DNA of 64,000 nucleotides, taken from Macrostomum lignano (lineage: Eukaryota). Each line of letters begins with the position of its first letter. Position 1 is the first letter of the stretch. A program made the translations under genes and the position numbers. Under the pieces are notes generated by a model. The model worked only from the letters and a program-made list of their open reading frames with translations, ran no database searches and was not told where the DNA came from. Shown here in pieces: positions 20,681-50,452 of this stretch. Where the stretch lies: NCBI GenBank assembly GCA_002269645.1, contig NIVC01002702.1, positions 84,779 through 148,778 on the forward strand, read 5' to 3'.

Positions 20681-20827
20681 ATGGTTTTAGAGGTAGACAT
20701 GGTTACATAGATTGTGTCGTCTATGGTTTTAGAGGTAGACAATGGTAGATTGTGTCTATGGTTTAGACGTAGGACATGGTAGATTGTGTCTACGGTTTTA
20801 GGGGTAGACATGATAGATTGTGTCTAT
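20681..20827. repeat. About 34-bp degenerate minisatellite (ATGGTTTTAGAGGTAGACATGGTAGATTGTGTCT), target of the RTE insertion; resumes at 22264
   Basis: The same units flank both ends of the LINE. Confidence 0.8.
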
Positions 20828-22263
20828 TGGTGTCCTGGCGGGAGGCCCCGCGCCCCGCGAGTGGACCCAGGCCAACATCGTCGGCATCCCGAAGAAGCCG
20901 GGCACTACACGGAAGGAGGAGCATCGTGGAATCTCGCTCATGTCCTGTACCGCGAAGCTGTTCAACCGGGTGCTATTAGCACGGTTACAGCCCGTGCTGG
21001 ACTCGTTCCTGCGGTACGAGCAGAACGGGTTCCGCCCCCATCGCGGTACGGTGACGCAGATCCTGGCCCTCCGCCGCATCATCGAGGAGGCACGCATCCA
21101 CCAGTCAAGCCTTATCGTCATCTTTGTTGACTTCCTCAAGGCCTTCGACTCGGTGGCGCGCGGCGCGCTGCCTCACGTGCTCCGTGCCTACAACGTACCG
21201 CAGCAGCTGATCTCCGCCATCATGGCGCTGTATCAGGACACCACCGCCGCGGTAGCGACGCCAGACGGACCGTCGGACCTGTTTAGCACGACCTCCGGAG
21301 TGCTACAGGGTGACACTCTGGCGCCCTTTCTCTTCGTGCTGGTGATGGACTGGGTGCTCAGGACCGGCCTGCCGACATCAGAGGACGGCTTTCTGCTGCA
21401 AAGGCGCACCAGTAGACGGCACCCGGAGAAGAAACTGTCTGTCCTTGGCTACGCGGCCCTGCTGTCTTCCACGGCCGAAGGCGCCCAACGGCTGCTGGAC
21501 GGCCTGACTGCGGCGGCGGCGAGGGTCGGTCTCGTCATCAACGCCAGGAAGACCGAGGTGCTGACGGTGCCGCATGATCTACCCGCCGAGATTCGACTTC
21601 GAGACGGCGACGGCCCCGGGACGGCGCTCCCGAAGTGCCTTCAGTTCGTCTACCTCGGCGGACTGGTGCCGGACGTCGGTGACGACCTAGCGAGACGGCG
21701 CGGCAAGGCCTGGGCTGCCTTCCGATCTGTGCGGGCGGTGCTGCTCTCCGAGGCCCTGTCCGACGGCGCCAGGTCCCAGCTGTTCCAGGCGGTTGTTGAG
21801 ACCGCCCTGCTGTACAATGCTGAGACCTGGACGCTGACCGGGGCGCTTGAGGCGCAGCTCGACGCGGCGCATGCGGCCCTAGTCCGCGCCGCTTTCGGCG
21901 CCCGCCGCGGCCCTGGCAGCGAGACAACCGAGTCCCTGTACAAACGCACAGGCCTGACGCGGCCTTCTGCCCTGCTGAGTCAGCGGCGCCTGCGGCTTGC
22001 CGGACATGTCATCCGGGCCGAAGCCTACTGCCCAGAACCGCTGCAGGACGTCCTGCTGTGGACCCCGCAGGGACCGCGCAGGCGTGGTCAGGGACGATCA
22101 GCCCGCTACGTCGACCGCCTTTTTGAAGATGCGCGAGCACCCAGCCAGACGGCCGGTGTGAAGCACATTAGAGACCTGGCTCTGAAACGCGCGATTTGAC
22201 GCTCCCCCCTCTTGGCCACTCCCGTGGCTGGCGTGGGGCGTAACTATTATTATTATTATTATT
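20828..22263 (+). mobile_element. 5'-truncated RTE-clade non-LTR retrotransposon (RT domain ending at 22199)
   Basis: RT motifs NGFRPHRG, FVDFLKAFDSV, GVLQGDTLAPFLF, YLG, ETWTLT, AGHVIR. 3' UTR hairpin GCCAC-TCCC-GTGGC; (TAT)n tail 22245-22263; TSD ATTGTGTCTAT at 20817-20827 and 22264-22274. Confidence 0.93.
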
Positions 22264-23469
22264 ATTGTGTCTATGGTTTTAGAGGTAGACATAGCTATAA
22301 TGAAATGGACATCCAATGCACTGCTACTTTTGCGTATGCATACTACTCCACGGAATAATTTCATTTGACTCGAGACGTAGAGAGCTTTAGTGGAAATTTA
22401 AAAGTCGCATAATCTAAGAAACAATCAAGCCGAGAAACTGCGATTTTACGTTTTTGTAACAATTCTTCTTAGGCCTATGTTAATCTATTCAGTAACGATT
22501 AACGAATCCAGTGGGAGGCGTCCTAGTCCTGTCCCAACTCTTTTGCCGTGGCTGTACTTGCATATAATAAGCTGACATCGTAATTTTGGGCTTATTTTGG
22601 GCCACTCAAAATGCTGAGCCAGTCCACCGAGCCGACTTACGACCGAGTACCGACCGCCCCTACTTTAAAAATCCTGGACCTGCCTGTAAATCCATATGTG
22701 TTAGCTTATCTTTTACTTTTTAAATTGTGCTGTCTAAGTAAATGACAGCACAATGACAGCACAATGAAAATGATAGCACAGCACTAAGTTTTAAGTGTAG
22801 AACTAATCTGCATTGCCATTAGTTTTATTTAGATGTATACTAATACTATATAATAGAGCCATGAGTATGGAAACTATGTATATAGCAGAAACAAATATTC
22901 TAATTTGTTAGAATATTTGTTTTTGTTAGACCTTTATCACTTAATGGCTGATTCACTGGACTTAGGCATCAAGTGGTAACCCTTAGGCCCCCTATTCTCT
23001 TATTATAATACAGAATTGCTAATTGTAGCTTTTCAATATTTCTAGCTTGAATAATTAATTAATTAAATGTAATCTTTCTTTTCATTTTATAGGCTACCTT
23101 AGCTTAAGCATAGGCCTACCCTAAGCCTAAAAGCATTTCTTTACTAGGCAGTAAATGCATTCTAGATTCTAAATTATTTTTCCTTTCTAAAAGATAATGA
23201 TATATATTATTTTTTGGCCTATCCTTACACTAGATATCACATAGAATATCCTAGAGATTATTGTTTATAGAAAGAAATTTAGAGAGAAATTTTTTATATT
23301 AAGTTTGTTTTTTTTTAGCTATTTTATAAATGATTAATTATTATCTTATTAATGAACTATATAGTATACCTTTAAATATAAGATTATTTATTTGAGGAAA
23401 ATATTTAGCTTCTCTATTTACCAATCATGATATAATTTATAATATATTAAATTGTTTTCAGACTATAAA

Positions 23470-26400
23470 ATGATGGTTGTTCTAAATAGCTCAATATTGG
23501 ATTTTTTCTTAGCTTTTTCCACATTGTTAGCTGCATGCATTTTTACTACTGGATTCTTTCCTGATGTTGGAAAATCATCTTACTCTGTTTGTGGCCAAAG
23601 TAGAATAAGAGGTAATATATTTTCAACCTTGTTAGCAAGCAGCTTTTCTACTGTAGGACCTTGGCAGAGGTTAGCACACAACCTTGGCAGAGGGTAGCAC
23701 ACAACCTTGGTAGAGGGTAGCACACAACCTTGGCAGAGGGTATCACACAACCTTGGCAGAGGGTAGCACTCAACCTTGGCAGAGGGTAGCACACAATCTT
23801 GGCAGAGGTTAGCACACAACCTTGGCAGAGGGTAGCACACAACCTTGGCAGAGGGTAGCACTCAACCTTGGCAGAGGGTAGCACACAACCTTGGCAGAGG
23901 GTAGCACTCAACCTTGGCAGAGGGTAGGACTCAACCTTGGCAGAGGGTAGCACTCAACCTTGGCAGAGGGTAGCACACAACCTTGGCAGAGGGTAGCACA
24001 CAACCTTGGCAGAGGGTAGCACACAACCTTGGCAGAGGGTAGCACACAACCTTGGCAGAGGGTAGCACACAACCTTGGCAGAGGGTAGGACTCAACCTTG
24101 GCAAAGGGTAGCACTGGACCTTGGGAGGGTAGCACTCGACCTTGGGAGGGTAGCACTCGACCTTGGGAGGGTAGCACTCGACCTTGGGAGGGTAGCACTC
24201 GACCTTGGGAGGGTGGCACTCGACCTTGGGAGGGTAGCACTCGACCTTGGGAGGGTAGCACTCGACCTTGGGAGGGTAGCACTCGACCTTGGGAGAGTAG
24301 CACTCGACATTGGGAGGGTAGCACTCGACCTTGGGAGGGTAGCACTCGACCTTGGGAGGGTAGCACTCGACCTTGGGAGGGTAGCACTCGACCTTGGGAG
24401 GGTAGCACTCGACCTTGGGAGGGTAGCACTCGACCTTGGGAGAGTAGCACTCGACATTGGGAGGGCAGCACTCGACTTACGGAGGGTGGCACTCGACCTT
24501 GGGAGGGTAGCACTCGACCTTGGGAGGGCAGCACTCGACTTACGGAGGGTGGCACTCGACCTTGGGAGGGTAGCACTCGACCTTGGGAGGGTAGCACTCG
24601 ACCTTGGGAGGGTAGCACTCGACCTTGGGAGGGTAGCACTCGACATTGGGAGGGTAGCACTCGACCTTGGGAGGGTAGCACTCGACCTTGGGAGGGTAGC
24701 ACCCCCACTCTATAGTAGCAATGTTGGAGATTCTGCATACACATGGTGAACTCAGTTCTACTAATTAACGGACGCAGATTTACAAATGAGCAATCAAAAT
24801 AATCATTATTTGTCCTCTGACTGGCATTTAGACAGACGATGTTTCGGTCGTAAAACTGTCCTACTATTGATTGATGGCATGCGACAGGACATGGTTTTCT
24901 CATCTGATAGACAATCTGCTGCTAAAATGCGCTTTCTGGACAGTGCCAGGAGAGGCAAAAGCAGAATTGCTGGCATTCGCGGCAATTATAGCGCTGTGGT
25001 GAAAGTTCAGTCGCCTACTGTTACTCTGCCTAGGATTAAGGTAGGCTGAGATCTCTTATCTCTGTCCTACACAATTCACCTTCCTCGCTTTCTCCTGTCT
25101 TTCTCTTCCCCATATTTCTCTTTCCCATCTTTCTCTTCCCTTTTTCTCTCCACTCTTTCTCTTCACTCTTTCTTTTCACACCTTTCTCTTCCCATCTTTC
25201 TCTTTCCTCTTTCTCTTTCCCATCTTTCTCTTTACCATCTTTCTCTTTCCCATCTTCTCTTTCCCATCTTTCTCTTTCCCATCTTTCTCTTCCCCTCTTT
25301 CTCTTCCCTCTTTCTTTTTCCCATCTTTCTCTTCTCCTCTTTCTCCTTCCCATCTTTCTCTTTACCATCTTTCTCTTTCCTCTTTCTCATTCCCATATTT
25401 CTCTTCCCTCTTTTTTTGTTTCTCTTGCTTATTTCTCTTCCCTCTTTATCTATCCCATCTTTCTCTTCTCTTTCTCTTCCCTCTTTCTCTTTTCCCTCTT
25501 TCTCTTTTCCATCTTTCTCTTCTCTTTCTCTTCCCTTTCTTCTTTACCCCTTGCCCTTTCCTTCTCCTTTTGCCTTCTCCCTCTCACCAATCCACCTTGC
25601 CTACTTCGCAGTGCCTCACAACCGGTCGAGTTCCGGGATTCCTGGACGTTTTGTGGAATTTCTTCGCTTCCGAATTGGCCACGGATAGCATTGTGCGTCG
25701 TTGGCATTCGGCCAATTTCAGCGTTCAGTTCTATGGGGACGACACCTGGACCCGGATGTTCCTGGGTAGCTTTGCCATGGCGCAAGGGCTGCCATCCTTC
25801 TTTGCTACGGACTTCTACGAGGTGAGGAATTGGCTTTTGATGACTTTATCATTCTGTGCCAGTCTTCTATAAATCCTCTGAACATTTTCATTTTGAGCCA
25901 CCCAGAGATCCCATATTGAGTCACTCAGATCTCATATTGAGTCACTCAGATATCCCACATTGAGTCACCCTGAGATCCCATGTTCAGTCATTTAAAAATC
26001 CCATATTGAGTCACTCAGATCCCATATTCAGTCACCCAGAGATCCCATATTGAGTCACTCAGATCCCATATTCAGTCACCCATTGATCCCATATTGAGTC
26101 ACTCAAAGATCCCATAATGAGTCATCCTGAGATCCCATATTGAGTCGCTTCTCATTGATCCCATATTGAGTCACTCAGATCCCATATTCAGTCACCCAGA
26201 GATCCCATATTGAGTCACTCAGAGATCCCATATTAATTCACTTCCCATTGATCCCATATTGAGTCACTCAGATACGCCCCAAAAAGTATTCATTTTTCCT
26301 AATTCTCACCCTGTCTCACCCACAAACTCTTAACACTTTGCACCATTCTAAACTATTAATAATTATCCGATCGCACTACTAAATTTTGCAGGTAGACAAA

Positions 26401-29400
26401 AATGTGACAGAAAATTTGCGAGAAGCGCTGAACGCTACATCAAGCTGGGATGTGCTCATCTTGCACTACCTCGGACTGGATCACATCGGCCATATTGAAG
26501 GCCCAAATAGTAGATTGGTGCCGGATAAACTTGCGGAAATGGATGCGGTTGTTGAGTCTATTGTTACGGCTTTGAGTAGCCAGGTAGGTGCTTGTGTGTG
26601 ATGGGAAATCTGTGGGGGTAGTGACTGATTATGGGATCTCTGAGTGACTCAATATGGGATCTCTGAGTGACTCAATATGGGATCTCTGAGTGACTCAATA
26701 TGGGATCTCTGAGTGACTCAATATGGGATCTCTGAGTGACTCAATATGGGATCTCTGAGTGACTCAATATGGGATCTCTGAGTGACTCAATATAGGATCA
26801 TTGGGAAGTGACTCAATATGGGATCAATGGGCAGTGACTCACAATGGGATACTTAAATCAAGTGACTCACAAGAAGCCGCTCCCAACCAAACCATCTCTT
26901 CAGCCAGTCGACTGGCTCCTAGTGGTAACCAGCGATCACGGAATGAGCGACCTTGGCGGTCACGGAGGTGCCTCCCCCGCCGAGACGCGAACTCCTCTCG
27001 TGTTGCTAAGCAGTGTACAGCTTTCCAGCAGTCTAGATCCATCGATTGAGCTCCCAGAACTAGAGCAGACAGATATGGCTAATTTGCTAACTAGCTGGAC
27101 AGGTGTTCAGCCTCCCAGGGCCAGTTTGGGACTGCTGCATCCGTCACTAGGCGGACTCGCCTGCGGCGGCTTCTCCAACTCGTTGCTTAGCAACAACTGG
27201 CTCGATTTGTTGGAATTAGAAGCCGAATTGAATTCTAAATCTGGTGAGAGTTTTTTGTTTGATTACTTTACTACTCTCTAACTGCTAAGTAACTGCACTA
27301 CTGATAATAAAGAAATCACAATTTTTCTTTATTTAAAAAAAACTATAAATTAGAGGCCTTCAATCGCTCCGAACGATCCAAGCGCTGCGCCGAAGATCTA
27401 AACTATTGCTACTCTGAGGCCAGACAAGCTCAACAGGCTTTGGTTTACGCATCGGCTGAGTACAGCTTGCCTAGAATGCTCATTGGTTTAGGGCTGGGCT
27501 GCCTCTGCTGTCTTTTTCGTTTGCCAACTTTGCTGCAAGCTGTTGGTATGATGACAGCAAAATCTAACGGCCCAAATGAATTCCAATCAGCCGACGACAG
27601 GGTTAGCTATTTTTATTGTTTGTTCTTAATGTACGCCCACCCCATCCTCCACAGCCACCCCATCCTCCACAGCCACCCCATCCTCCACAGCCACCCCATC
27701 CTCCACAGCCACCCCATCCTCCACAGCCACCCCATCCTCCACAGCCACCCCATCCTCCACAGCCACCCCATCCTCCACAGCCACCCCATCCTCCACAGCC
27801 ACCCCATCCTCCACAGCCACCCCATCCTCCACAGCCACCCATCCTCTACATCCACCCCATCCTTCGCAGCCACCCCATCCTCCGCAGCCACCCCATCCTC
27901 CGCACGCACCCAATCATCCTTCACATACTATGCTTCGACTTCATACCGAGCACAAAGCGCCAAATTTCATATAAATTGCCCAAAATTGTTCCAGCTAAAC
28001 AACCTGGCGATCTACCTGCTAATTCTGGGCACCTGTCTAGCTCCGATATTAATTCACGCGTCTACTAGTTTAATAGAGGAGGAGCATCAGTTTTGGTACT
28101 TTGCTTGCACCAGCCTGTTTGCCTGTCGCGTCCTATCAGCCAGTCTAAGCACTGCTAATTTACCTTGGCTGGAATGTATTCGTCAACTGATTCAACCCCT
28201 GATTCCTCTTGTAGCATTTCGATTAGCTAGAAATTTCAATCAAACCGGAGACAAATGGGCCCACCTACCAGATCTAGATCAGCACCTGCGCGGTTGGCCT
28301 GTCTGTTACGCAATAATTCTCCTCTGTAGCATCTGTTTAATTGGTGTTTTTCTGCAAAAATACCTTGATTATAACAATACATTTTCAAACGATACTACTT
28401 ATACTATAGTTGCAAATAGTAGTAAAATTCGATGCCTAATTTTAATTGCATGCTGTTTTTGCGCTATTTGGCTTCGTTGTAGTTTGGCATTGACAAATTT
28501 TATTAATCCTATAATTAGCTGTTTGGGATTGCTATTGGCTATAGCATGGACTGTTATTGGGATTATTACTAATGCTAATTATGGCTGCCCAGTTGCCTCA
28601 TCAGCTGGTGGCATTCTACTATGCCAGACTTTGTTGGCAAGTTGTCCGGCCAACTGTGCAGTCCTTTGTCTGCACTGCCTAGCCATTGGACCAGCGTTTG
28701 CTAAACCAGGACTTTACAGTTCGAGGCGTGATAGACTCATTCTGATGCTCACCTTTGTTTGGCTGGGTCAGGCTCTCTACTTTCAGTTGGTAAGTCTGCA
28801 CTTTTTTATCGTTGTTGAGTTTTATGCTTGAAAAATCAATATAGGGTTTTGGCCGCCCCCCCCCCTGGCACAGGTCCTTCAGTGACATCAACGGGGCGCT
28901 TGCAAAATCCCGAAATTTTGCAATTCAGAAATTTCATAAACCCAAAATTTCATAAACCCGAAATTTCATAAAACCCGAAATTTCATAAACATCGAAACAT
29001 AAAATATCGGCATAATTCATAGAACCGAAATTTCACGTCAAATTGTACGATATTGAAATGAACTGGATGAATAAAAATAAGACTAAACTGAGAATTAAAA
29101 TAAATTAAGCACTTCATATTTCTAGAATCTTTTTATTCCTTTACTTTTACAAAGTCGTCTCGGATGTGCAACTTTTGGCTAGGAAAGAAACTGTCTTTCG
29201 ACATTTTGAAAATTCGGGTTTTGTGAAACCCGAATCCGTCTCACAGCACCAGCGATGAGGCAATTCTGTCCATACTGTACGCAGACGCAATAATAATAAA
29301 AATAATTGATTACACCTGCCCCGATTGGGCCAGATGTGCAACCGACAGCTCAGCCGCAGCTATTGCGCGGCGCATCTGAAGGCTGCGTACGGCTGTTCAG

Positions 29401-29886
29401 TCCAAAGACTGGGGGGTCAACACACAGCCTCAATTACCCCATCAATTACCCCATAATAAACAGAATTTTCCGCGTTACGATAAAATGAAAATATGTACCG
29501 TCCAATTTCAGGGCCAGTCAAACAGTCTCGCAACGGCCGATATTGGCGCATCATTTGTTGGCCTGCCGTTTAATTCGATGATTTTAAGCGGCGCTTTGCT
29601 CGTCCTGTCAACTTGGACTGGCCAATTGTTTTATCTATTGCTTGCAATTCTGCTTCTAAAAGGGCATAAAAGCATCTGTACTGGTGGAGAGTTCAGACGA
29701 GCATCATCTGTGATTGGTCTGGCGCACCTATTGGCAGGTTACAGCTGGTGCAGCCTGGCGCTATTCTGCATTGTACAGCGGCATCATCTGTTTGTATGGA
29801 CAGTGTACGCACCCAAGTACTGCTATGGCTCCGCTTACCTGGCTCTGCTAACTGTGCTGTATCTTGTTGCGCGGCTTTTCGATTGA
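23470..29886 (+). CDS. PIGG: GPI ethanolamine phosphate transferase 2 (836 aa predicted)
   Basis: Exons 23470-23611, 24832-25040, 25612-25821, 26392-26583, 26904-27243, 27354-27601, 27995-28789, 29512-29886 (2511 nt, phases consistent). Motifs GFFP, LLIDGMRQD, PTVTLPRIK, YGDDTW, ILHYLGLDHIGH, SDHGM..GGHGG, EEEHQFWYF, GQSNSLATADI, VWTVYAPKY. Confidence 0.92.
23657..24702. repeat. Minisatellite in PIGG intron 1; 23-bp unit switching to a 21-bp unit near 24110
   Basis: TTGGCAGAGGGTAGCACACAACC followed by TTGGGAGGGTAGCACTCGACC. Confidence 0.95.
25052..25585. repeat. CT-rich degenerate repeat in PIGG intron 2
   Basis: CTTTCTCTTTCCCAT-like units running up to the exon 3 acceptor. Confidence 0.9.
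25905..26272 (+). repeat. About 21-23-bp minisatellite (GAGATCCCATATTGAGTCACTCA) in PIGG intron 3
   Basis: Tandem units; reverse complement of the intron 4 array. Confidence 0.92.
26628..26870 (-). repeat. Same minisatellite, inverted (TGAGTGACTCAATATGGGATCTC), in PIGG intron 4
   Basis: Exact reverse complement of the intron 3 unit. Confidence 0.92.
27638..27905. repeat. 18-bp minisatellite (CACCCCATCCTCCACAGC) in PIGG intron 6
   Basis: Reads (HPILHS)n in the PIGG frame. Confidence 0.93.
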
Positions 29887-30124
29887 TTTGAAATCCAAGT
29901 TACATGTAGGCAGTTTCTGTTCTTTTTGAAAAAAACTTTGGTGCTCCTAGCAAACTGACAAAAAGATGACTATAGCTCAGCTAAATTTATTTGCATTTAC
30001 TTTTTTCCCTTCTCCTTTTTTTCTTAATATAAATTACACCTATTAGTACTGTTCTAAGTAATAAACAGTTTTTTTTGCGATTTATACTTTCAATTATAAA
30101 AAATAACTAAAAACAAGGGTAGAG

Positions 30125-30575
30125 AGGATTGAACTGGCAGGCCAATTATTATCAGGGGAGTGACGGGGTTGAACTAGCGAGCCAATTATTATCAGGGGAG
30201 TGATGGGGTTGAACTAGCGAGCCAATTACTATCAGGGGAGTGAGGGGGTTGAACTAGCGAGCCAATTATTATTAGGGGAGTGACGGGGTTGAACTAGCGA
30301 GCCAATTATTATCAGGGGAGTGAGGGGGTTGAACTGGCAGGCCAATTATTATCAGGGGAGTGAGGGGGTTGAACTGGCAGGCCAATTATTATCAGGGGAG
30401 TGAGGGGGTTGAACTGGCAGGCCAATTATTATCAGGGGAGTGAGGGGGTTGAACTGGCAGGCCAATTATTATCAGGGGAGTGAGGGGGTTGAACTGGCAG
30501 GCCAATTATTATCAGGGGAGTGAGGGGGTTGAACTGGCAGGCCAATTATTATCCGGGGAGTGAGGGGGTTGAACT
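30125..30575. repeat. 40-bp minisatellite between PIGG and AP5M1
   Basis: GGGGGTTGAACTGGCAGGCCAATTATTATCAGGGGAGTGA, about 11 units. Confidence 0.95.
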
Positions 30576-30618
30576 GGTTTCTATTTCTATCACTAACACA
30601 TTTTCTTAATTTCTTCAG

Positions 30619-31347
30619 TCTGTGCTGTGCCTGGGTCTGTTCCGCCTGCGTGACACTGGCGGCAGTTTTTCCGGTCAGCCGGTGCTACTGCACCGGTTCT
30701 CGGCAACGTCGACCAGCCTGGCCGGTTTACCGGCCGCCATGGATCAGAAAGAGTTAACAGCCTGCATTGTCAGAGCGCTGGGCTTGGCCTATCCAACAGA
30801 ATCGTTTGTGCCCGAGCGAGACTCCTGCCGATTGTCTCCGACAAAGCCAGTGTTCTCAGTGCCCGTGCCGGGCGGGGTACTCCGGCCGTTGCTAGTCACC
30901 GAGCATAGTCCGCCAGGCGCGTTGCTATGGTGCCTTGGCAACGAGGATCATGAAGACGCCGTGATGGACGCGTTCGCTTTGCTTGAAGCTGTTGGCGAGT
31001 TTCTCGGCCCTCTGTCGAAGGATTTCGGCCCGGAGGAGCCGCGGCTGGCCGAGCTGCAGTTGTTCCTGTCCTATGCCTGTCCTTTCGGCACCCCGCTGGC
31101 TCTGGAGCAGCCTCTCTATCGGCACCTGTTCGGCCAGGTGCCAAGCCTGCCGGCGGCGGGCAGCAGAGAGGCGGCAGAGTCGCCGCACACAGTCTGGACT
31201 GTGGGAGCGCCCGCCGAAAAGAAGTCGAAGAAGGTCAGGATAGGAGCGGGGATCAAAGTAGCTCAGCGGCTACTGCGTCTTAGTTTTGTGCCGCTGGAGT
31301 GCCTGGGCTCGATTCCATGCGCGACTACATGAGTAATGGGCCACTTA

Positions 31348-31392
<45 letters not shown>

Positions 31393-33011
31393 GGTATTAT
31401 GGGAGCTGAGTTTAAAATCTGTTTATTTCTCAATCTCCAACGCAGGGTTCCTCCGTGGCCCTGCAGTTGACAGAGCGGGTCTATTATTCTTGCCAGGACG
31501 AGAATTCCTGTCATTCGCGGCAGGGCGATAATTACCTGTGCTTCGGGTGTCTCACCTGCGACGCGTCGTTGTTAAAGGTGAGAATTGAGAAAAGAGGATG
31601 AAGGTGAGGGTGAGAGGGTGAGGATAAGGGTGAGAGCGAGAGTAAGGGTGAGAGTGAGGGTGAGTGAGAGTGAGGGTGAGAGTGAGGGTGAGGGTGAGTG
31701 AGAGTGAGGGTGAGAGTGAGGGTGAGAGTGAGGGTGAGGGTTAGTGAGAGTGAGGGTGAGAGTTAGGGTGAGTGAGAGTGAGGGTAAGAGTGAGGGTGAG
31801 TGAGAGTGACGGTGAGGGTGAGAGTGAGAGTGAGGGTGAGGGTGAGTGAGGGTGAGAGTGAGGGTTAGAGTGAGTGAGAGTGAGGGTGAGAGTTAAGGTG
31901 ACGATGAAGATGAGGGTGAGGGTGAGGATGAGGGTGAGAGTGAGGGTGAGGGTGAGTGACAGTGAGGATGAGGGTGAGGGTGAGAGGGAGGATGAGGGTT
32001 AGGGTGAGGGTGAGGGTGAGGGTGAGAGGGAGGATGAGGGTGAGGGTGAGGGTGAGGGTGAAGCGGTGAAAGTGAGGGGGTGAGGGACCGAGGGTGAGGG
32101 TGGGGTTCATTGTCAGCAGTGTATCAGTCGCCATACTGCATGCATACTAACTAAAATCTTCTCAAACCCCGCAATCGCAGGAGAACTGCAGTTTAGAAAT
32201 TCGCCTAGACAGTCCGCGTCAACTGTTGCACGGAGTCCTGGTGACGCCCCGCTGCGCCTACTGGGACGCCACGCCTCAGTCGGCTCGGATCCGGCTGCAG
32301 CCGCCTCGCCAGGCTGGCAGTCGTTTGATCACCTACTGGCTGGCGCAGCCGTTGCATCCGCTTGTCACAGGTTTCTACCAGGTGAGACTGCAGCAGCAGC
32401 AACAACAGCAGCAACAGCAGCAGCAACCATCGCACATGCGCCAGTCTGCTGCTGTCAGGCTTCAGTTAATATTTTCCGACATTCTGTGTCGCGGCGCGGC
32501 CAAATGCGACTATTGCGAGGTGCACTTGCACCTGCCAGCTTGGGCTCCGCAGCCGCGGGATGCTAAATTGACTTGCAGCTTAGGCACAGCCTCGCTCACG
32601 CAGCAGCAGCAGCAGGCTTCTCCTTCTGGTCGGATTTTAGTCTGGAATTTGACCGCCGGAATGGCAAAACTGTCCCCGGGTACACCGGTGAACCTCGTTG
32701 GCACCGTCAGCTTCGTCAGGACGGGCGCTGCCGCCGCTCCGGCAGGCGATTCCATGCGCGACGACATGACCTGCTGCGCTAGGCTGTACTTCCGGTTCTC
32801 TCGCGTTGCACTGTCCGACGCCAAAGTCGATGCTCAGTTTGTCGGTCTTAGCGCCGGCCCGGCGCCGAAATCCTCGCCCTCCGTGTCTCTAGCCGTCGAA
32901 TCCGGCGATTGCGCCGTCTGGAATTCCTTCGGCGACGCGCCGATTTCCTACCGACCGGAGGATCGACTGCTGAACACTGCCGCCGGATTTGAATTGCACA
33001 GCGCGTCGTGA
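30619..33011 (+). CDS. AP5M1: AP-5 complex subunit mu-1 (MuD); no local genomic initiator ATG before the first coding exon
   Basis: Exons 30619-31233, 31446-31577, 32181-33011 (all phase 0; 525 codons plus stop). Motifs FVPERDSC, ACPFGT, VALQLTERV, GFYQV, CDYCEVHL, GTVSF, WNSFGDAP, matching AP5M1 as recalled. Confidence 0.85.
31349..31393. repeat. (GACA)n microsatellite in AP5M1 intron 1
   Basis: About 11 units. Confidence 0.95.
31600..32105. repeat. Degenerate (GTGAGG/GTGAGA/GTGAGT)n hexamer array in AP5M1 intron 2
   Basis: Direct reading of the sequence. Confidence 0.92.
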
Positions 33012-33560: not shown

Positions 33561-36015
33561 TATAGGCTACGGCCCACATCGAATCTGTTTATAGATTGGT
33601 CAAATAAATTTATTGCTTTACGTGCTGTTTTATTTGGTTAGTTTTGCCGATTGTTCAAGTTTGTAGTTAGCTTACAATCGTGCTTGTCCTTTCATTCAAC
33701 AATCGTTGCTTCTCAAGCATAATATGCATGCGTATTAAATAAATGTCAGCCATTTTTAATTCTCTTAGAGTTTGGTTGTGTGCCAATGATAGATTCTCAC
33801 TAAAGTCCGCTTATTGAACTGCTTCAGTATGAAGCTGGAGTACTTGTACTGTAAGTGTAATACTGGGTCTGTTAAGAACGTTGGAACTTCGCCACTTGTG
33901 AAAATTAATCTGTCAATCAAAAAAACAATGGAAGGATATTCCTTTCACCGGAGTTTGTGCAAACATTTTCAAGTCGACTGACATTATATGAATTATTTAC
34001 AGTGAGAAGTGCCATTTTTTCTGAGTTATTTACTGTCCAGGTCAGAGATATCACCTGATAGACTTGAGGACGAGTGATGGGAAACATTTCAAATAGAAAA
34101 CACCTGTTGTGACAGCAGCCAGTTCGTATAAAGAAGCTGTTCTTGTCTGCAGTCACTTGCAGTGTGTGCTTCGGAAATGTCTAAAGAGCTAATATCAGTT
34201 TGCATACTGCTTCTAGCAGCAACACAAGCAGAATTAACAACAGGCGATTGCAGCATCAACCGGTTGGAGTTCAAGCGCTACTCCTTCCTGCCAAACTGTT
34301 CTCAAGCGCTGTCTTTTGTGTCTGAGCAGATTTTCACCTGCGGCATGGCTGCTGCCGTGTCTGCAGTCCCCATGGCAGTTGTCATGCAGTCGTCAAACTC
34401 CAGGCCCAATTGCCACGTGACGGCCGCTCTGTGCCCTCGCTACCGACTGTGCTCTGTGGACGACTGCGACTCAATCGTGCTCATGCCAGTCAGTCTCATC
34501 GCTCTTGAGCACCTAATCTTGGGCGTGAGAGCCGGCAGTGGATATACAGTGTGGGAACTGATGACCGGAAGTACTGGTGGCAACTCCGACTCTGTAGTGC
34601 AACCAGCAGCTCTGGACTCGGACATTGCCAACCTGCCGGACGCTTTTCGTTCCAGCCTGTTAGAGAACGTACGTCGCCTGATTTCTGGTCTCGTCTACAA
34701 GCAGTTCATTGTGCAGATTTACAACGGATCTGTAGTTCGACTAGAATTCGATGTAGGTTCCTCTGTTGACGCTCTAACCAATCTGAACTGGTTTAGGAAG
34801 CAGCGACTCGTCCGCAGCTGCCCAGTGAAAAATGATTCATGGATTCCACGTGGGTTCCACGTGGCCATGTGGAATTTAAATGTTTCCTTAATTTTTGCAA
34901 ATTAATGACTTAAAGATGACATAATGGTATGCAAAGTATTTTTTATGCATTATTTTTTAATTTTTACTGTCCTAATGTTGATGTGGATTTTACAAGGAAT
35001 TCATGAGAAATAAGCGTATATTGATTCAACATGGAATCCACTTCGATAAAAAACTGTGATACACCACATTCAGACGTTTTTATGAAATTACTATAATTAA
35101 TTATTACATTTATATGCTTTTAAGTAAAAATTAATATCTTAAAGCTAAATTATAATCAGAAAATAAGATACTGTTTGTTAAAATAGACAAAATAGAAGTG
35201 AACAATAAAAAACGTTTCGTGCTTTTTAAGATTAAATTTATTTTATTTTATATTCGTCAATGTCTTGCATGGTTCAAGGCCTTGAAAGATAAATTGCCTT
35301 GTTTATGGCTATTTAAGCACCTTAAAAATTTTAGTAGACGTAGCCTATAGGCAATAACTTATAAGGCCATGGCCTCCATGGGATTAGAAATTAGATAAAT
35401 CAGTATTTCATCATAGATAGGCCTAATACTTTTGCCAGTTTTGGTAAAATCCATCCATGATAAATTTATTTAGGCTTATCCAATTTCTAGGAATCCCATG
35501 GCCATGTCCATAGATTGGCTACTCATTTTTTAAACTTAAATAGGCCTTTCGAAGTTCATAATTTCCTCTTAGTCCTACCTATTAGTCCTAGGCCTAGGGC
35601 CTATCTATTTATGTATGCTTATTAATATTAGGCCTATTTTAAGCTAGGCCTATAACTATCAATTCAGGTCCTTCTATTTTAATTAAGGTTAAGACTAGGC
35701 CTAGCTTGACTTTGTGAATTGTGACTAGTCAATCTAGTTAATCTGTTAAAAATCTATTCATTTATGATTTTCTTCAAAAAAGCCTATTAGCATCTTTTGG
35801 ACTTGTTGCATTTTTAAAAACAATATTATTAATCATTATAAATAATTCTTTGCAATTACACTTGCAACCTGTTTTTGGCATAGCTAGCCTAGCAGATCCC
35901 TAAGGTTGCTATTATAAATAAATAATGATTATTGTAAATTTGATCTGATTTAGGCCAAGTCCAGAATTTAATAGCCATAGGGCATAGCTTTTAAGATTAG
36001 GCCTAATGTTTAGGC

Positions 36016-36419
36016 CGGTGCATGACCAAGACCGCCACATACCAAGACTGCCACAGCTCTTACTGACTATTGGAATTGAGGGGAAGCTACCAATCTTTCA
36101 GCATTGCTATTGGTTATGATGGGTTGTGGAGTTAGATAAGGAGGAAGTGTCCTAAGATTGGTCACTAATAAGATGAATAAGTGGCCCAAAATGATTGCAA
36201 GTCAACCAGGGCAATTTTAACAATTCAAATTAAATGAAAAAACAAGGAGCCTGGCTCACTCACCTACCTAGCCAGGCTAGCCTGCTCACTAGTTCTTCTC
36301 TTGTGGCCTTGTCTTGCTGGCTCTCCCCATCTTACCCCTCCTCAGCCCCATCCAATAACATGGTGAGCCAAATTCCTCCCTCCTAGCTCCCCCAAGTGTG
36401 GCGGTCTTGTCCTATACCG
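36016..36419. mobile_element. MITE (404 bp) nested in the CMC-like element
   Basis: Imperfect TIRs CGGTGCATGACCAAGACCGCCACA / TGTGGCGGTCTTGTCCTATACCG; TSD TTTAGGC at 36009-36015 and 36420-36426. Confidence 0.75.
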
Positions 36420-37082
36420 TTTAGGCCTAATCATACTATTTTTTTATTAGAGGCAGGGGGTTGTATGCACCCTGGCACACTTTAAGCGACATAGGCATAC
36501 AACTAGCGAGAGGCATTGCTGCCTATTCCACTAACTCCCCTGAGCAGCCAGGATGGAATTCTTGCTCAGAGGAAGGAAAACGCGCGCGCACGTTTTTGGA
36601 GCAGCGCGCAAGTGCGCACGCCAGGGTCGCCAGCTAAAAATAAGAGAACTTGAGCGCACATAACCATGTTGTATACAAATTTTATCAAATTTTAACAATC
36701 GAAGTATTTTGTGTACATTTGCTACTATTTTTGCTTTTCGATTATGCAATTACGAGTAAGGCAACAAAAAAGATAATGACACGTTTTACATTCATAAAAA
36801 ATATTGCTTTGTATATTTTTGAGTACATGTATGCAACTGTGTATATTTTTGTTTTAATAATAACTTTTAATTAATTAGAAAAAGAGAAACACCTGCAAAA
36901 ATGACAATTTTAGTACAGTTATGTTTTTAGTATAATATTAGACGTTTAGTATAGTTGGATTTAGTATAGTTGGGTTGATGTATATTGTCGCAAAATTCAA
37001 ATCGAAATGTTGCGTTTCATGTACATGTTTAATTAAAATAATGATTTTTCTTTGCCCTTCCTGCAAGTTACATGTAGCTATA

Positions 37083-37329
37083 CAGTGGCAGATCAATTTT
37101 TTGGGGGCGGTCTAAGTTTGGGCGCCAACACGAGTATAAGGGTGCCAATTTAGGGGCTTAAAAATGCATGTAGGGGGCGATAAGATATTAGCTTAGGGCG
37201 CAAAAAATGGTGTTTCGGGGCGAAAAAATCAAGTTTAGGGGGGGGGGCGCAAACTTTGGCTTTTTCTGGGGGTGCACTATGTTCCGTCAAAAGTACTTAT
37301 TTTAGGGACGCCCCCCAAATCCGCCCCTG
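37083..37329. mobile_element. MITE (247 bp) nested inside the hAT element
   Basis: TIRs CAGTGGCAGAT / ATCCGCCCCTG (9/11); TSD TAGCTATA / TAGCTAGA (7/8). Confidence 0.7.
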
Positions 37330-37702
37330 TAGCTAGATGTACATTCAACCCTCTCTGTGCTGCGTCGTCCCATCTTCATTTCTGTCCTTTTCTCTGTGGC
37401 CTGCATGCCTAGGTACAAGTACAAACCCCCCACTCTTGTTTTTCTATCTGCCCCGCACTTCATGTACGCTAGGCATATTATTAGCGTCCCCTCATTCTAA
37501 AATTCAAGACAAATATAAGTTTTGTTGCACTAAGCGTGCTGGTGTGCTTGTCCATTTGTGGTTATTGCCTGGAGAGTTCTGAATTGTTTACGCATTATAT
37601 AGCGAATGATTTATTGAGTCAAACATCTTAACAAGTCATTGTACATGCATTGTGGTTCATTTCAACTTGCGTATAAATGCTAGTCAGACGTTACAGTCGG
37701 CA

Positions 37703-40660
37703 TTACACGAGGTGGCCCAACCGTGGTTTAACACAATTTTTTCGGCGCTGAACTGCGCTTCTAAACCCACTATTTAAATATCCGCGGATGGTACGGGGAT
37801 CGGATGCAAGTGGACATGCCGCAATCTTTAAATACTTAGACGCGATTTCGTTGACTGAACGTTCGATTAGAGAGCTGATGGGCGGGAGGCACCAATCGAT
37901 CTTCGTTCGCAACTGCAAGGCTTTATTTTTTTGCCTTCCCATAATGCGTTGGCTACGCATTACGCCGTAGAAACTTTCAGCAATTGCCTCCCCACCACCT
38001 GTGTTCAGTGCAACGTCAAGAAGAATGCACACAGCTCGACCAGCTTCTTCAAAGACTGGTTGAACTGTGTATAATTGTTTTATAAGTGCTGCCTCATCCA
38101 GAATACAGTTGTCATAACAGCGTACATCAGTTTCAACTTTAAAAACCTGCTGGAGGCGCGAATTCTCTTCAATTTTTATGGAATTAATGATTTGGCCCTT
38201 AATTGGCTTTTTTGACTTGGAACATACAAGGCACTGTATCCCATACGGAGCAAGGTGACCCCAAAAGAGGGATTCAATAACATTCTTGTACTTTACATGT
38301 ACGTAGCTATGGTTTCCAAGTATCAGTTCTGAAAATAATTCGTCTGATTCAGCCACCTCAGAAATATATGGGAGTGAAACCACATAATTAAAAAACGAAC
38401 AAAACTCTGGCTCACCAGCCTCCATGAAGCCAGAAAAGTTTATGCACTGCCGAATAGGCTTGGCTGTACCATTGGAAGCAGTTTCACGGGAACCACATAA
38501 AAGGTATAGTAGCTGCTCAAAGTCCATAAACTTGGCTAAGATATTTGAGCATGCTGAGGTTCCCTTATTTAATCGATTAGCCACACTTTGACGGAGAGAG
38601 CTGGAAACGACTTCGACCTCTCTGACTGCATCATTAGTTGTTCTCTCCTCCCAAAGGTATACTTTCTTCTTATTACACCTCCGACGTCTTCCTCGACTAC
38701 TTTCTGCTTCTTGCCCGACATATTCTTCGCCAATTACATGCCAGCCCTCTAGAAGCCGCACCTTCTTAAAGCTCATACCTTCAATGTCAGCTCGGTGCTT
38801 GTCATATAATGGACGACACTTTCTATCCATCATTTGTAGAAGGCGATTCCCCCATGAAACAATTTTCCAGTGATTGAATTGCAATCCCTGGGCCAGCTCC
38901 ATCATTTCAACTAGTGGTTGAAACACATCTAGTAGCAGACACAGATCGGTAGCAAAGTCTGCTCCCAAAACCCTATATTGGAGGGGAAAGTCTTCATCTT
39001 CATCGTGAATGCGACGAAAAGTTGTTGCATACAGACTGTAAGCTCTTTCAATTTTGACCCACTGCTTAACAGATGAGCTTGTAAATCGCTGTGTTGCATA
39101 TGGTATTGGTACAGACACTTTTTCCTTCATTTTGGACGCCACTTTTGACATTAAAGTATGGTTTTTGCCCCTTCCCATTAAATGGTTAAACTCGTTGGCC
39201 CTTTCAATAAACAATGTTAAGCAATCTGCCGCAGGTTTACCGTACTTTGACTCGCGAACATCTAACACCGCTAAATTAAGTAAGTGCGATACATCCCATA
39301 TTACAGGTTGAAATGTAGAACTGTCCGCGATATTGCTACGCCCTGACAAGCGGGTTATTTCATTTGCAAACATTGCCGGTTGATACTGGCCATCAGCTGC
39401 TGTACCACAATACCGCAAGAGGTCCTTTTCCCCCAGTTTTAATTCATCTTGAATCGTGCGAAAGATAAGCTGCGCTAGCTCAGCCAGACTCCCCCAGTAA
39501 CTACTACGCGATCTAAGTCCTGACTCGTGCTTGTGTCAGAATCTGATTCATTCGATTCACCAGAATCAGAAACATCACTATTTACTGAAGCACTGGAGTT
39601 CTCCTCGCAGACGTCTTCATTTTGTACAAAATAAACACATGGGGCACCAACTGGGAATGCGACTCTTTCCCCTCGGCTTATAGTTGCAAGCAAGATAGCC
39701 TGGTTTGTCTCGCGGGTCTGTGTCGCTTTATCAACAATTCCCATGAAATGTGGAGGGAGACCTGTAGACTCCAATGGCGTCAAAAGAAGCTTCCGGTTTT
39801 CATCATTGATCCATTCGTTAGCTGCATTAATAATAATTGAAAGCTGTTTTCTTCCGTGCCCCCGATTTCCAATTTGACAGCCATTGAGTTCTAGAAAAGT
39901 TACTTGATTTTCATAGTGTACAGCACCAGCCTTGGATCTAATAGTTTGGATTGCTGAGCGGACTAAGCGTTTAGCAATTTCGTGAGATAGTTTGTCTTCT
40001 TCTGCTTGATCCTTTTGTTTTTTTACAGAGAGCGCATGCTGCCGTCCCTGTGAATTATTTGATGACCCTAAAAGATGCCCTCGCAGTTTGCTCTTGAAAT
40101 TTCGCCAAAACTGTGTATCTTTCTTATTAGAAGTCCCTTTTATAATCAACTCAGTTTCGCTGGGATTCATGTAAACACCTGTGCCCAATGTGCAATTATC
40201 ACTATAGTGACGAGACACTTGAAAAACAGACATTTTACTCAGCTTTCGAGTATCTAAAGCTTCCCAGCATGTTTTACACCTTACTACAGAGTGTCCATCT
40301 TCTTCATTCAAAAATAATTCTATGTCTGGGACTTCCCGCGCTACGTCTACAATAGAGTTTAGCGTCATCCACTTCTCCAAGTCCAATACAAACTCGCTGT
40401 TAGTTACACTTGCGCTGTGACTTCGATTGGAATTCTCAGATGGCTTACCTAATGTCTCAAAGGCAAAGGCGAGTTTTCTTTCAACTATATCTCCTATCAT
40501 ACTAGGCAGTTTTTTAACAAGATCGGAAAATGCATTGGCACAGTCACCAGCACAGGATGGGTTTATTACACCAGAGTTTGTTGGTGGTAGAGTAGTACTT
40601 TTTCGCGATCAGCCTCAGAACGAGTCTTCTTTGCCTGAGGTGCCTCAGTATCGCTAGAAG
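37703..40660 (-). CDS. hAT-family (ZNF862-like) transposase, main exon with two apparent -1 homopolymer frameshifts
   Basis: Motifs GIVDKAT, GTAADG, WDVSHLLNL, RF, AIAESFYGVM. The 39475..40500 and 37703..39418 ORFs join by restoring one base in the C5 run at 39491-39495. A second slip is in the T5 run at 40599-40603. Acceptor at 40661-40662; possible further 5' exons at about 40760-41680. Confidence 0.75.
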
Positions 40661-50082: not shown

Positions 50083-50140
50083 TGCTTGGCTTGCTTCAGG
50101 TGTTCTGGCTGCTGCTGCTGGCGCTGGAGTATTGAGGGCG

Positions 50141-50397: not shown

Positions 50398-50452
<55 letters not shown>

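What the first reader, a model, noticed from the sequence alone, without database searches (positions are those of the whole stretch)
29886..30650. Candidate PIGG-AP5M1 operon in which the spliced leader supplies the AP5M1 start codon
Seen: AP5M1 homology begins immediately after a strong acceptor (TTCTTCAG|TCT GTG CTG, 30618/30619) in phase 0. There is an in-frame TAA just upstream (30607-30609). The first in-frame ATG (about 30739) lies some 40 codons downstream. Only about 730 bp separate this acceptor from the PIGG stop; roughly 450 bp of that is a 40-bp minisatellite, and an AATAAA sits near 30060. I found no ATG-bearing exon with a phase-0 GT donor in the gap. Established: flatworm spliced leaders end in AUG that can act as the initiator Met, and trans-splicing resolves operons. 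Inference: SL-AUG plus exon gives MSVLCLGLFRL.., making AP5M1 a downstream operon gene whose translation depends on trans-splicing. PIGG (TTTTCAG 8 nt before ATG) and GALNT10 (ATCAG 1 nt before ATG) also have acceptors right before their starts.
Basis: partly seen in the sequence, partly recalled or inferred. Interest (0 to 1): 0.8.

Follow-up and report, generated by a model that had tools for sequence, protein, structure and literature searches.

The report
Start codon borrowed from spliced leader
In this flatworm (Macrostomum lignano) locus the AP5M1 gene has no start codon of its own at its 5' end and most likely takes its ATG from the trans-spliced leader RNA, a mechanism already known in flatworms, so this is a sound annotation point, not a new kind of biology.

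Summary
The window is Macrostomum lignano. Its single 35-nt spliced leader (SL) is published and ends in ATG.

- **Main new evidence:** GenBank protein PAA75795.1 (BOX15_Mlig017254g3, "partial") comes from a 98-99% identical second copy of the locus. It begins exactly at SVLCLGLF, the first codon after the acceptor. In that annotation the 5' ends were set by mapping SL-trimmed reads.
- **No cis start in the gap:** the 732-bp gap holds only three ATGs, and none can form a phase-0 ATG exon.
- **The 40 codons before the first internal ATG look translated:** codon-usage score is +11 bits in frame against -4 and -8 out of frame. They are colinear with the M-[S/A]-x-R-G-V-W N-termini of 15 AP-5 mu orthologues. 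AlphaFold models them as strand beta1.
- **Correction:** their sequence similarity to orthologue N-termini is not statistically detectable. Profile homology starts just after Met42.
- **Operon with PIGG:** it fits the published criterion of a repeat-adjusted distance under 1 kb (here 276 bp), but co-transcription is untested.

Verdict: a new member of a known kind (SL-AUG initiation, Cheng et al. 2006), of modest interest.

The parts
23455..23472 (+). Candidate trans-splice acceptor ttttcag (23455-23461), then 8 nt, then the first ATG (23470-23472) of the PIGG-family gene, which is the upstream gene of the candidate operon
   Evidence: Read. The encoded N-terminus MMVVLNSSILDFFLAFSTLLAACIFTTGFFPDVGKSS looks like a PIGG signal-anchor (the comparison with human PIGG is from memory). 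An SL ATG joined here would be out of frame: ATG ACT ATA AAA TGA.
29512..29886 (+). Last coding exon of the PIGG-family gene. The intron before it is phase 0. Stop TGA at 29884-29886
   Evidence: Translation. Pfam PIGO_PIGG membrane region, E=1.1e-15. The penultimate exon's donor TTG|GTAAGT at 28789/28790 is also phase 0.
30060..30065 (+). The only AATAAA in the gap, 174 nt after the PIGG stop. Inferred poly(A) signal of PIGG
   Evidence: It is followed by a T8 run. The function is inferred, not shown.
30122..30577 (+). 40-bp minisatellite, 11.4 copies, filling most of the intergenic or outron region. Each unit carries a GTGAG and a TATCAG but no usable ATG
   Evidence: The second genomic copy has 10.4 units, so the copy number is variable and probably neutral.
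30591..30618 (+). 3' splice-site module: branch-point-like cactaac (A at 30596), pyrimidine-rich tract, and CAG acceptor (AG at 30617-30618). An in-frame TAA lies at 30607-30609
   Evidence: It matches the published trans-splice acceptor motif [T/C]TNCAG. GC content jumps from 24% to about 65% at this boundary.
30619..30738 (+). First 40 codons of AP5M1 exon 1 (SVLCLGLFRL...GLPAA). They form an open frame with no ATG and are inferred to be translated from the SL-donated AUG
   Evidence: - Codon-usage log-likelihood is +11.3 bits in frame against -3.9 and -8.4 out of frame.
- The GenBank 5'-partial CDS PAA75795.1 starts here.
- The stretch is colinear with orthologue N-termini.
- AlphaFold models a strand at residues 3-10, pLDDT about 85.
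- Against: no significant sequence similarity to orthologue N-termini.
30739..30741 (+). First in-frame ATG (Met42 of the full protein), in the context gccgccATGg. It is the rival or secondary initiation site
   Evidence: Profile homology to AP-5 mu starts right after it.
30619..31233 (+). AP5M1 exon 1, 205 codons, donor AAG|gtcagg
   Evidence: tblastn of P0001 and splice-site inspection.
31446..31577 (+). AP5M1 exon 2, 44 codons
32181..33011 (+). AP5M1 exon 3, encoding the mu-homology domain. Stop TGA at 33009-33011
   Evidence: PDB 8yab_E (AP-5 mu-1) is the only sequence hit and the top Foldseek hit.

Best explanation
The first exon of M. lignano AP5M1 (30619-31233) is a spliced-leader trans-splice acceptor exon with no initiation codon of its own.

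**Proposed mechanism.**
- The 35-nt SL, which ends in AUG, is joined at ttcttcag|TCT. Its AUG then lies in frame as codon 1, giving M-SVLCLGLFRL....
- Translation from that AUG yields a 526-aa AP-5 mu subunit with an intact N-terminal beta1-beta2 hairpin.
- The pre-mRNA is most likely a PIGG-AP5M1 polycistron. PIGG would be cleaved and polyadenylated shortly after AATAAA at 30060. The downstream RNA, which includes the 456-bp minisatellite, would be discarded as intercistronic or outron sequence when the SL is added.

**Shown:** the sequence anatomy, the published SL sequence, the published 5'-partial CDS starting at the acceptor, and the coding-like codon usage of the first 40 codons.

**Inferred:** actual SL addition at this site, use of the SL AUG by ribosomes, and co-transcription with PIGG.

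**My estimates:** SL addition here about 0.85; the SL AUG as the functional initiator about 0.7; true co-transcription with PIGG about 0.6.
For: 1. **Organism and SL.** The window is M. lignano: UniRef and GenBank proteins are 100% and about 99% identical. Its SL ends in ATG; 30% of genes are SL trans-spliced and 15% lie in operons (PMC8629364).
2. **Published annotation.** GenBank PAA75795.1 is marked 'partial' and begins SVLCLGLF, exactly the first codon after the acceptor. It maps to a 98-99% identical second copy whose gap and exon 1 are the same apart from one base in the last minisatellite unit, one minisatellite unit fewer and one synonymous change. That annotation trims the SL and cuts transcripts at SL-read peaks (PMC5730564). 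If the transcript began further upstream, the ORF would run back to the TAA at 30607 and the model would start at Met42.
3. **No cis start.** No ATG-bearing exon with a phase-0 donor exists in the 732-bp gap.
4. **Acceptor quality.** There is a full 3' splice-site module matching the published trans-splice motif, and a sharp GC jump at the boundary.
5. **Codon usage.** Codons 1-40 score +11.3 bits in frame against -3.9 and -8.4 out of frame. Only 1.65% of GC-matched unannotated windows and 0.14% of shuffles reach this.
6. **Orthologues.** All 15 full-length AP-5 mu orthologues start M-[S/A]-x-[R]-[G/A]-[VIL]-W. Ten have Ser2, as here, and about 44 residues precede the helix that aligns with Mlig residues 44-54. 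Within the whole protein, the best match to the orthologue motif VLFSRRYPTVERRA lies at the colinear position.
7. **Structure.** AlphaFold with an alignment places residues 3-10 as strand beta1 (pLDDT about 85). The whole model's top Foldseek hit is the solved AP-5 mu chain, 8yab_E.
8. **Precedent.** The SL AUG is an experimentally shown initiator in S. mansoni: it is in frame in 28% of trans-spliced mRNAs, and more than 40 cDNAs need it (Cheng et al. 2006, as cited in PMC9851317).
9. **Operon.** Same strand, and a repeat-adjusted distance of 732-456=276 bp, under the published 1-kb threshold.
Against: - I saw no SL-containing read or cDNA. The protein collection holds no transcript-derived protein starting MSVLCLG, and no supplementary table I could search lists the gene.
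- The first 40 residues have no statistically detectable similarity to orthologue N-termini. Significant homology starts immediately after Met42, whose context gccgccATGg is strong, whereas the SL AUG context ttgcATGt is weak.
- The AlphaFold support depends on the alignment. The single-sequence model is uninformative (pLDDT 42).
- For the operon, about 60% of trans-spliced M. lignano genes are not in operons. The AT-rich gap contains TATAAA at 30028 and 30095, which could belong to an own promoter. PIGG is not annotated in the GenBank copy, so no shared transcriptional unit is documented.
Confidence: 0.7

Rival explanations
1. Translation starts at the first internal AUG (30739, Met42), whether or not the mRNA is trans-spliced. 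The 40 upstream codons would be 5' UTR or a dispensable extension. M. lignano AP-5 mu would then lack the canonical beta1-beta2 hairpin, or both isoforms would be made by leaky scanning.
For: - Profile homology to AP-5 mu begins right after Met42.
- The first 40 residues are not significantly similar to orthologue N-termini.
- Met42 has a strong context, gccgccATGg, whereas the SL AUG context is weak (T at -3, T at +4).
Against: - Codon usage of codons 1-40 is coding-like in the AP5M1 frame only.
- All orthologues have about 44 residues before this point, and they form the central strand of the N-terminal domain.
- If the SL is added, its AUG is the first one a scanning ribosome meets, and it is in frame with no stop.
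- A protein starting at Met42 would lack strand beta1 (inference from the fold).
Confidence: 0.2
2. AP5M1 is SL trans-spliced but monocistronic. Its own promoter would sit in the AT-rich sequence between the PIGG poly(A) signal and the minisatellite, and the minisatellite would be the outron. PIGG and AP5M1 would be close neighbours, not an operon.
For: - TATAAA at 30028 and 30095, in sequence of 27% GC.
- Most trans-spliced M. lignano genes are not in operons.
- No shared transcriptional unit is documented.
Against: - TATAAA is expected about 0.6 times by chance in this AT-rich stretch (my estimate from the composition).
- After subtracting the repeat, only about 80 nt lie between the likely poly(A) site and the acceptor. 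[quoted passage not shown]
Confidence: 0.3
3. The acceptor at 30619 is used in cis. The donor would be either a distant upstream exon carrying the ATG, or the PIGG penultimate exon (28789/28790, phase 0). The second option skips the last PIGG exon and gives an in-frame PIGG-AP5M1 fusion.
For: The PIGG donor and the AP5M1 acceptor are both phase 0, so a fusion would stay in frame. Chimeric read-through models are common at flatworm operons (PMC12582326).
Against: - The published CDS starts at the acceptor and is marked partial, not fused.
- Phase compatibility has a one-in-three chance.
- Such a fusion would replace the last three PIGG membrane helices with a cytosolic adaptor subunit (inference).
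- No ATG exon exists in the gap.
Confidence: 0.05

Closest known systems
SL-AUG initiation in flatworms (Schistosoma mansoni; Cheng, Cohen, Ndegwa and Davis 2006, J Biol Chem 281:733), also called 'slORFs' (PMC9851317)
   Same: The SL ends in AUG. The acceptor is in phase, so the SL AUG opens the conserved ORF. The recipient exon has no AUG of its own at the position of the orthologues' N-terminus.
   Different: This is a free-living macrostomid rather than a parasite. Use of the SL AUG is inferred here, not shown by reporter or cDNA experiments. I found no discussion of SL-AUG initiation in the M. lignano papers I could read.
M. lignano SL trans-spliced genes and operons (Wudarski et al. 2017, PMC5730564; Ustyantsev and Berezikov 2021, PMC8629364)
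   Same: The acceptor motif [T/C]TNCAG is present. The upstream neighbour is on the same strand. The intergenic region is inflated by repeats and falls to under 300 bp once the repeat is subtracted, as described for M. lignano operons.
   Different: Operon membership of this particular pair is not documented in anything I could access. PIGG has no GenBank CDS in the copy I could inspect.
C. elegans SL2-type operons
   Same: A poly(A) signal of the upstream gene is followed by an intercistronic region and then a trans-splice acceptor of the downstream gene.
   Different: M. lignano has a single SL with no specialised SL2. The nematode SLs do not end in AUG and do not donate the initiator codon. 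The intercistronic region here is about 530 nt, mostly minisatellite, against about 100 nt in C. elegans.

Membership tests
SL trans-spliced gene of M. lignano | [quoted passage not shown] | tested here: met
   cttcag|TCT at 30613-30618, with a branch-point-like cactaac 22 nt upstream and 16/20 pyrimidines.
SL trans-spliced gene of M. lignano | No cis donor-bearing coding exon upstream that could pair with the acceptor | tested here: met
   There are three ATGs in the 732-bp gap, and none has a phase-0 GT donor inside its ORF. GTGAG motifs do exist in the minisatellite, but no exon precedes them. Non-coding upstream exons cannot be excluded from sequence alone.
SL trans-spliced gene of M. lignano | RNA reads carrying the SL joined to the exon | not testable with these tools
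   Only an indirect indication is available. The GenBank 5'-partial CDS PAA75795.1 starts at the first codon after the acceptor, in an annotation whose 5' ends come from SL-trimmed reads.
SL-AUG-initiated ORF (Cheng et al. 2006 type) | The species' SL ends in AUG | tested here: met
   The published SL is ...TTATTGCATG (PMC8629364). No SL RNA gene lies in the window itself.
SL-AUG-initiated ORF (Cheng et al. 2006 type) | The SL AUG is in frame with the main ORF, with no intervening stop | tested here: met
   The acceptor is phase 0, and the 40 codons from 30619 to the first internal ATG are open.
SL-AUG-initiated ORF (Cheng et al. 2006 type) | The conserved protein sequence extends upstream of the first internal AUG, so the SL AUG is required | tested here: inconclusive
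   For: codon usage, colinearity with orthologue N-termini, the best motif match at the colinear position, and the AlphaFold strand at residues 3-10. Against: no significant profile or global similarity.
SL-AUG-initiated ORF (Cheng et al. 2006 type) | Protein or ribosome evidence of initiation at the SL AUG | not testable with these tools
   No proteomic or ribosome-profiling data were reachable.
M. lignano operon (criterion of Ustyantsev and Berezikov 2021) | Adjacent genes on the same strand with a repeat-adjusted distance under 1 kb | tested here: met
   732 bp minus the 456-bp minisatellite is 276 bp.
M. lignano operon (criterion of Ustyantsev and Berezikov 2021) | The downstream gene is SL trans-spliced | tested here: inconclusive
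   Indirect support only, as in the rows above.
M. lignano operon (criterion of Ustyantsev and Berezikov 2021) | Co-transcription as one precursor from a single promoter | not testable with these tools
   This needs RNA reads or RT-PCR across the gap and transcription-start mapping. The suffix 'g3' in the locus tag is ambiguous: it could mean the third gene of a unit or the third copy of a cluster.
AP-5 complex subunit mu-1 (AP5M1) | Best sequence relatives are AP-5 mu-1 proteins | tested here: met
   Beyond the window's own protein, an exhaustive HMMER search found 20 relatives. Seven of the nine I looked up carry a source name, and every name is AP-5 complex subunit mu-1 (sea urchin, amphioxus, turtles, sea cucumber, Nematostella, snail, sponge). 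The only PDB sequence hit is 8yab_E, AP-5 mu-1.
AP-5 complex subunit mu-1 (AP5M1) | Mu-adaptin architecture: an N-terminal longin-like domain plus a C-terminal mu-homology domain | tested here: met
   The AlphaFold model has mean pLDDT 75.7. The top Foldseek hit is 8yab_E (E=1.8e-19), followed by the mu subunits of AP-1 to AP-4. Pfam itself gave no hit for this divergent protein.
PIGG (GPI ethanolamine phosphate transferase 2) | PIGO/PIGG membrane region and N-terminal phosphodiesterase-type domain | tested here: met
   Pfam PIGO_PIGG, E=1.1e-15 and 3.8e-13. Motifs such as WDVLILHYLGLDHIGHIEGPNS are seen. Choosing PIGG over PIGO rests on my memory of the human sequences and was not tested.

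The most novel reading that the evidence does not exclude
AP5M1 may be one visible case of a large, unrecognised class of M. lignano genes that have lost their own start codon and depend on the SL AUG. Trans-splicing would then license their translation. The current annotation, which trims the SL before ORF calling, would systematically label these genes 'partial' or truncate them to an internal Met. In this gene the weak-context SL AUG and the strong-context Met42 could also yield two isoforms whose ratio depends on trans-splicing and leaky scanning.
Probability: 0.35. Interest if true: 0.45.

Novelty: new member of a known kind. Interest (0 to 1): 0.27.

Why it matters
- **Annotation.** It corrects a gene model. 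The public protein is marked 'partial' and a UniProt model is truncated and misnamed, yet the gene is probably complete once the SL AUG is counted.
- **Wider effect on M. lignano.** The same correction may apply to many M. lignano genes, because the published pipeline removes the SL before ORF prediction.
- **Transgenesis.** M. lignano is the only flatworm with stable transgenesis according to Ustyantsev and Berezikov 2021. Knowing that a gene's initiator codon arrives in trans matters for designing reporters, knock-ins and rescue constructs.
- **Limits.** It adds no new mechanism. SL-AUG initiation and operons are both established in flatworms.

Tried and rejected
1. **Transcript evidence in the protein collections.** The N-terminal query found only P0001 and its cluster. 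P0001 is not on record in the contig index. No protein beginning MSVLCLG exists there.
2. **Supplementary tables.** I searched those of four M. lignano or flatworm SL papers for AP5M1 and PIGG and found nothing. One paper has no supplements held. No paper mentions AP5M1 together with Macrostomum. Wasik et al. 2015 is not held.
3. **Sequence-similarity proof that codons 1-40 are the AP-5 mu N-terminus.** The local profile, the shuffle test and the global alignment were all non-significant. Only two weak positional signals remained.
4. **Synonymous versus non-synonymous comparison with the second genomic copy.** Exon 1 differs by a single synonymous base and codons 1-40 are identical, so this carries no information.
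5. **Closest foreign relative.** P0002, on ENA contig L002, lacks its N-terminal exon; the contig ends in an intron.
6. **PIGG locus tags.** I searched the PIGG last exon, hoping the tags would settle whether PIGG and AP5M1 share a transcriptional unit. There was no hit, and PIGG is not called in L001.
7. **Single-sequence AlphaFold.** pLDDT 42, uninformative.
8. **SL RNA gene in the window.** Only chance-level matches.
9. **Bacterial promoter and terminator scan.** Not used, because it does not apply to a metazoan.
10. **Non-AUG initiation.** I considered initiation at GTG (codon 2 of the exon) or CTG (codon 3 of the exon) on an unspliced RNA. I rejected it as less economical than the documented AUG-ending SL.
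Full report
**What is in the sequence.**
- A PIGG/PIGO-family gene on the + strand ends ...ARLFD* with TGA at 29884-29886. Pfam PIGO_PIGG gives E=1.1e-15 for the last exon.
- 732 bp downstream lies a canonical 3' splice site, ttcttcag|TCT, at 30618/30619.
- Of the gap, 456 bp is a 40-bp minisatellite (30122-30577, 11.4 copies). It occurs nowhere else in the window.
- The only AATAAA in the gap is at 30060-30065.
- The frame that opens at 30619 is closed upstream by TAA at 30607-30609. Its first ATG is at 30739, codon 41 of the exon.
- The gap holds only three ATGs on this strand. Their ORFs are 1, 26 and 4 codons long, and none contains a phase-0 GT donor. No ATG-bearing cis exon in the gap could feed this acceptor.
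- The acceptor has a branch-point-like cactaac 22 nt upstream and 16/20 pyrimidines. GC content jumps from 24% to about 65% exactly at the junction.

**Organism and gene.**
- The exon translation is 100% identical to a UniRef protein of Macrostomum lignano.
- I rebuilt the gene as three phase-0 exons: 30619-31233, 31446-31577 and 32181-33011.
- Beyond the window's own protein, an exhaustive HMMER search found 20 relatives. Seven of the nine I looked up carry a source name, and all seven are named AP-5 complex subunit mu-1, from sponge to turtle.
- The only PDB sequence hit is the AP-5 mu-1 chain 8yab_E. It is also the top Foldseek hit of the AlphaFold model, ahead of the mu subunits of AP-1 to AP-4.
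- The AP5M1 assignment is therefore sound.

**What is already known about this species.**
- M. lignano has one known SL, CGGTCTCTTACTGCGAAGACTCAATTTATTGCATG, which ends in ATG.
- The trans-splice acceptor motif is [T/C]TNCAG.
- Operons were defined by a repeat-adjusted intergenic distance under 1 kb. Repeats are known to inflate operon spacers, and the main peak is near 100 bp (PMC8629364).
- In S. mansoni the terminal SL AUG is in frame in 28% of trans-spliced mRNAs, and more than 40 cDNAs need it as the initiator (Cheng et al. 2006, as summarised in PMC9851317).

**The strongest new evidence.**
- The cluster of the UniRef hit also contains GenBank PAA75795.1, 'hypothetical protein BOX15_Mlig017254g3, partial'.
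- Its sequence begins SVLCLGLFRL, exactly the first codon after the acceptor.
- It maps to scaffold NIVC01000861.1 (locus L001). This is a 98-99% identical second copy of the locus.
- In that copy the gap and exon 1 match the window apart from one base in the last minisatellite unit, one minisatellite unit fewer and one synonymous change.
- In that annotation the SL was trimmed from reads, and transcripts were cut at SL-read peaks before ORF calling (PMC5730564).
- A 5'-partial ORF that begins within 2 nt of an AG| is what that pipeline yields for a trans-spliced exon lacking its own ATG.
- Had the transcript model begun further upstream, the ORF would have run back to the TAA at 30607 and the model would have started at Met42.
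- This is indirect experimental support. I could not see the reads.

- A profile of 15 orthologue N-terminal domains aligns at E=9e-24, but only from residue 43, immediately after the internal Met.
- The first 40 residues score no better than shuffles: 979 of 2000 shuffles score at least as high, and a global alignment gives z=1.2.

Other evidence nonetheless favours translation.
- A codon-usage log-likelihood trained on 1,553 codons from other exons of the window gives +11.3 bits in the AP5M1 frame, against -3.9 and -8.4 in the other two frames. Trained without AP5M1 it still gives +10.4. Only 1.65% of GC-matched unannotated windows and 0.14% of shuffles reach the observed value.
- All 15 full-length orthologues start M-[S/A]-x-R-[G/A]-[VIL]-W. 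Ten have Ser at position 2, as here, and about 44 residues precede the first helix.
- The first 9-10 residues rank in the top 1.4-2% of windows of the protein against orthologue columns 2-11. The best match in the whole protein to the motif VLFSRRYPTVERRA is VLLHRFSATSTSLA, at the colinear position.
- AlphaFold with the 21-sequence alignment models residues 3-10 as a strand (pLDDT about 85), residues 25-28 as a second strand and residues 44-54 as a helix. This leans on the alignment; the single-sequence run was uninformative.
- A protein starting at Met42 would lack the beta1-beta2 hairpin that every orthologue has.

**Most likely mechanism.**
- The SL is joined at 30619, and its AUG becomes codon 1 (ATG|TCT GTG CTG = MSVL...).
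- The SL AUG context is weak (T at -3, T at +4), whereas Met42 sits in gccgccATGg. Some leaky scanning to Met42 is therefore possible.

**Operon.**
- PIGG and AP5M1 are on the same strand. The repeat-adjusted distance is 276 bp.
- If PIGG is polyadenylated about 20 nt after AATAAA, only about 80 nt of non-repeat sequence separates the poly(A) site from the acceptor. This is at the published ~100-bp peak.
- That meets the published operational definition, but co-transcription is not shown.
- The AT-rich gap holds two TATAAA motifs (about 0.6 expected by chance), so an own promoter with a minisatellite outron remains a live rival.
- PIGG has no CDS in the GenBank copy, so the locus tags could not settle it. 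The 'g3' suffix is ambiguous.
- The PIGG penultimate donor (28789/28790) and the AP5M1 acceptor are both phase 0. An in-frame read-through fusion is formally possible but not supported by the annotation.

**Side claims.**
- PIGG does start 8 nt after ttttcag, and GALNT starts 1 nt after aaatcag.
- In both cases an SL AUG would be out of frame. For PIGG it would give the 4-codon ORF ATG ACT ATA AAA TGA, overlapping the ATGATG start.
- The GALNT pattern is at chance frequency. These remarks add little.

**Verdict.** This is a well-observed and largely correct finding. It is a further example of a known flatworm mechanism, in a species whose SL, trans-splicing rate and operons are published, and the gene's 5'-partial annotation already reflects it implicitly. 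It is useful as an annotation and construct-design point, and as a pointer to a possibly large class of SL-AUG-dependent genes. It is not a new kind of system.

Noticed in passing
window 34829-44557: About 9.7 kb is present in the window but absent from the otherwise colinear second copy, L001. It contains two long minus-strand ORFs (37706-39535, 610 aa; 39478-40608, 377 aa) with no Pfam hit. I detected no terminal direct or inverted repeats. This is probably an insertion polymorphism or an uncharacterised mobile element.
   Followed up: partly
window 23462-23475: If PIGG is trans-spliced at ttttcag|ACTATAAAATGATGG, the SL AUG would open a 4-codon ORF (MTIK*). Its TGA overlaps the first PIGG ATG and abuts a second ATG. 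This resembles a termination-reinitiation arrangement. It is purely a reading of the sequence.
   Followed up: no
window 30122-30577 versus L001 9544-9959: The intergenic 40-bp minisatellite has 11.4 units in the window and 10.4 in the second copy. Every unit carries a consensus-like donor GTGAG and a TATCAG. These would be cryptic splice signals inside the presumed outron.
   Followed up: partly
window 32388-32425 and 32970-32980: The AP5M1 polyQ tract is 12 Q in the window and 10 Q in GenBank PAA75795.1. There is also one Asn/Ser difference near the C-terminus.
   Followed up: no
UniRef A0A1I8J532 (P0001), window 30964-32387: The UniProt model of this gene starts at an internal Met (MDAFALLEAV), stops at the polyQ tract, and is named 'Type I inositol 3,4-bisphosphate 4-phosphatase'. 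The name does not fit, because the sequence is AP-5 mu.
   Followed up: partly
window 23651-24750; 25040-25870; 27607-27971; 31348-31393; 31594-32106; also 2000-3400, 11000-11550, 45450-46270, 50040-50800, 52230-53070, 53660-54090, 54600-55170, 57150-57700, 61000-61670: The window is unusually dense in mini- and microsatellites, many of them inside introns. Examples are PIGG intron 1, AP5M1 intron 1 with (AGAC)n, and AP5M1 intron 2 with (GAGGGT)n. They produce long spurious ORFs in several frames.
   Followed up: no
window 20817-22196 (+): A LINE-type reverse transcriptase ORF (Pfam RVT_1, E=4.9e-26) lies about 1.3 kb upstream of the PIGG start.
   Followed up: no
window 16127-17830 (+): Exons encode a WSC domain (E=4e-18) and an F5/8 type C (discoidin-like) domain (E=1e-12). 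The discoidin exon is duplicated in tandem (16692-17252 and 17345-17830).
   Followed up: no
window 48490-49029 (-): An exon encodes a glycolipid transfer protein domain (Pfam GLTP, E=1.6e-20). It lies between the insertion and the GALNT gene.
   Followed up: no
L002 (ENA ERZ25070786 ctg97859l) 425-1537: The closest non-Macrostomum relative of this AP5M1 (E=2.8e-20) sits on a 6.7-kb contig from an ENA assembly. Its called protein starts at an internal exon just after an acceptor, ttttttag|G. The N-terminal exon lies beyond the contig end.
   Followed up: partly
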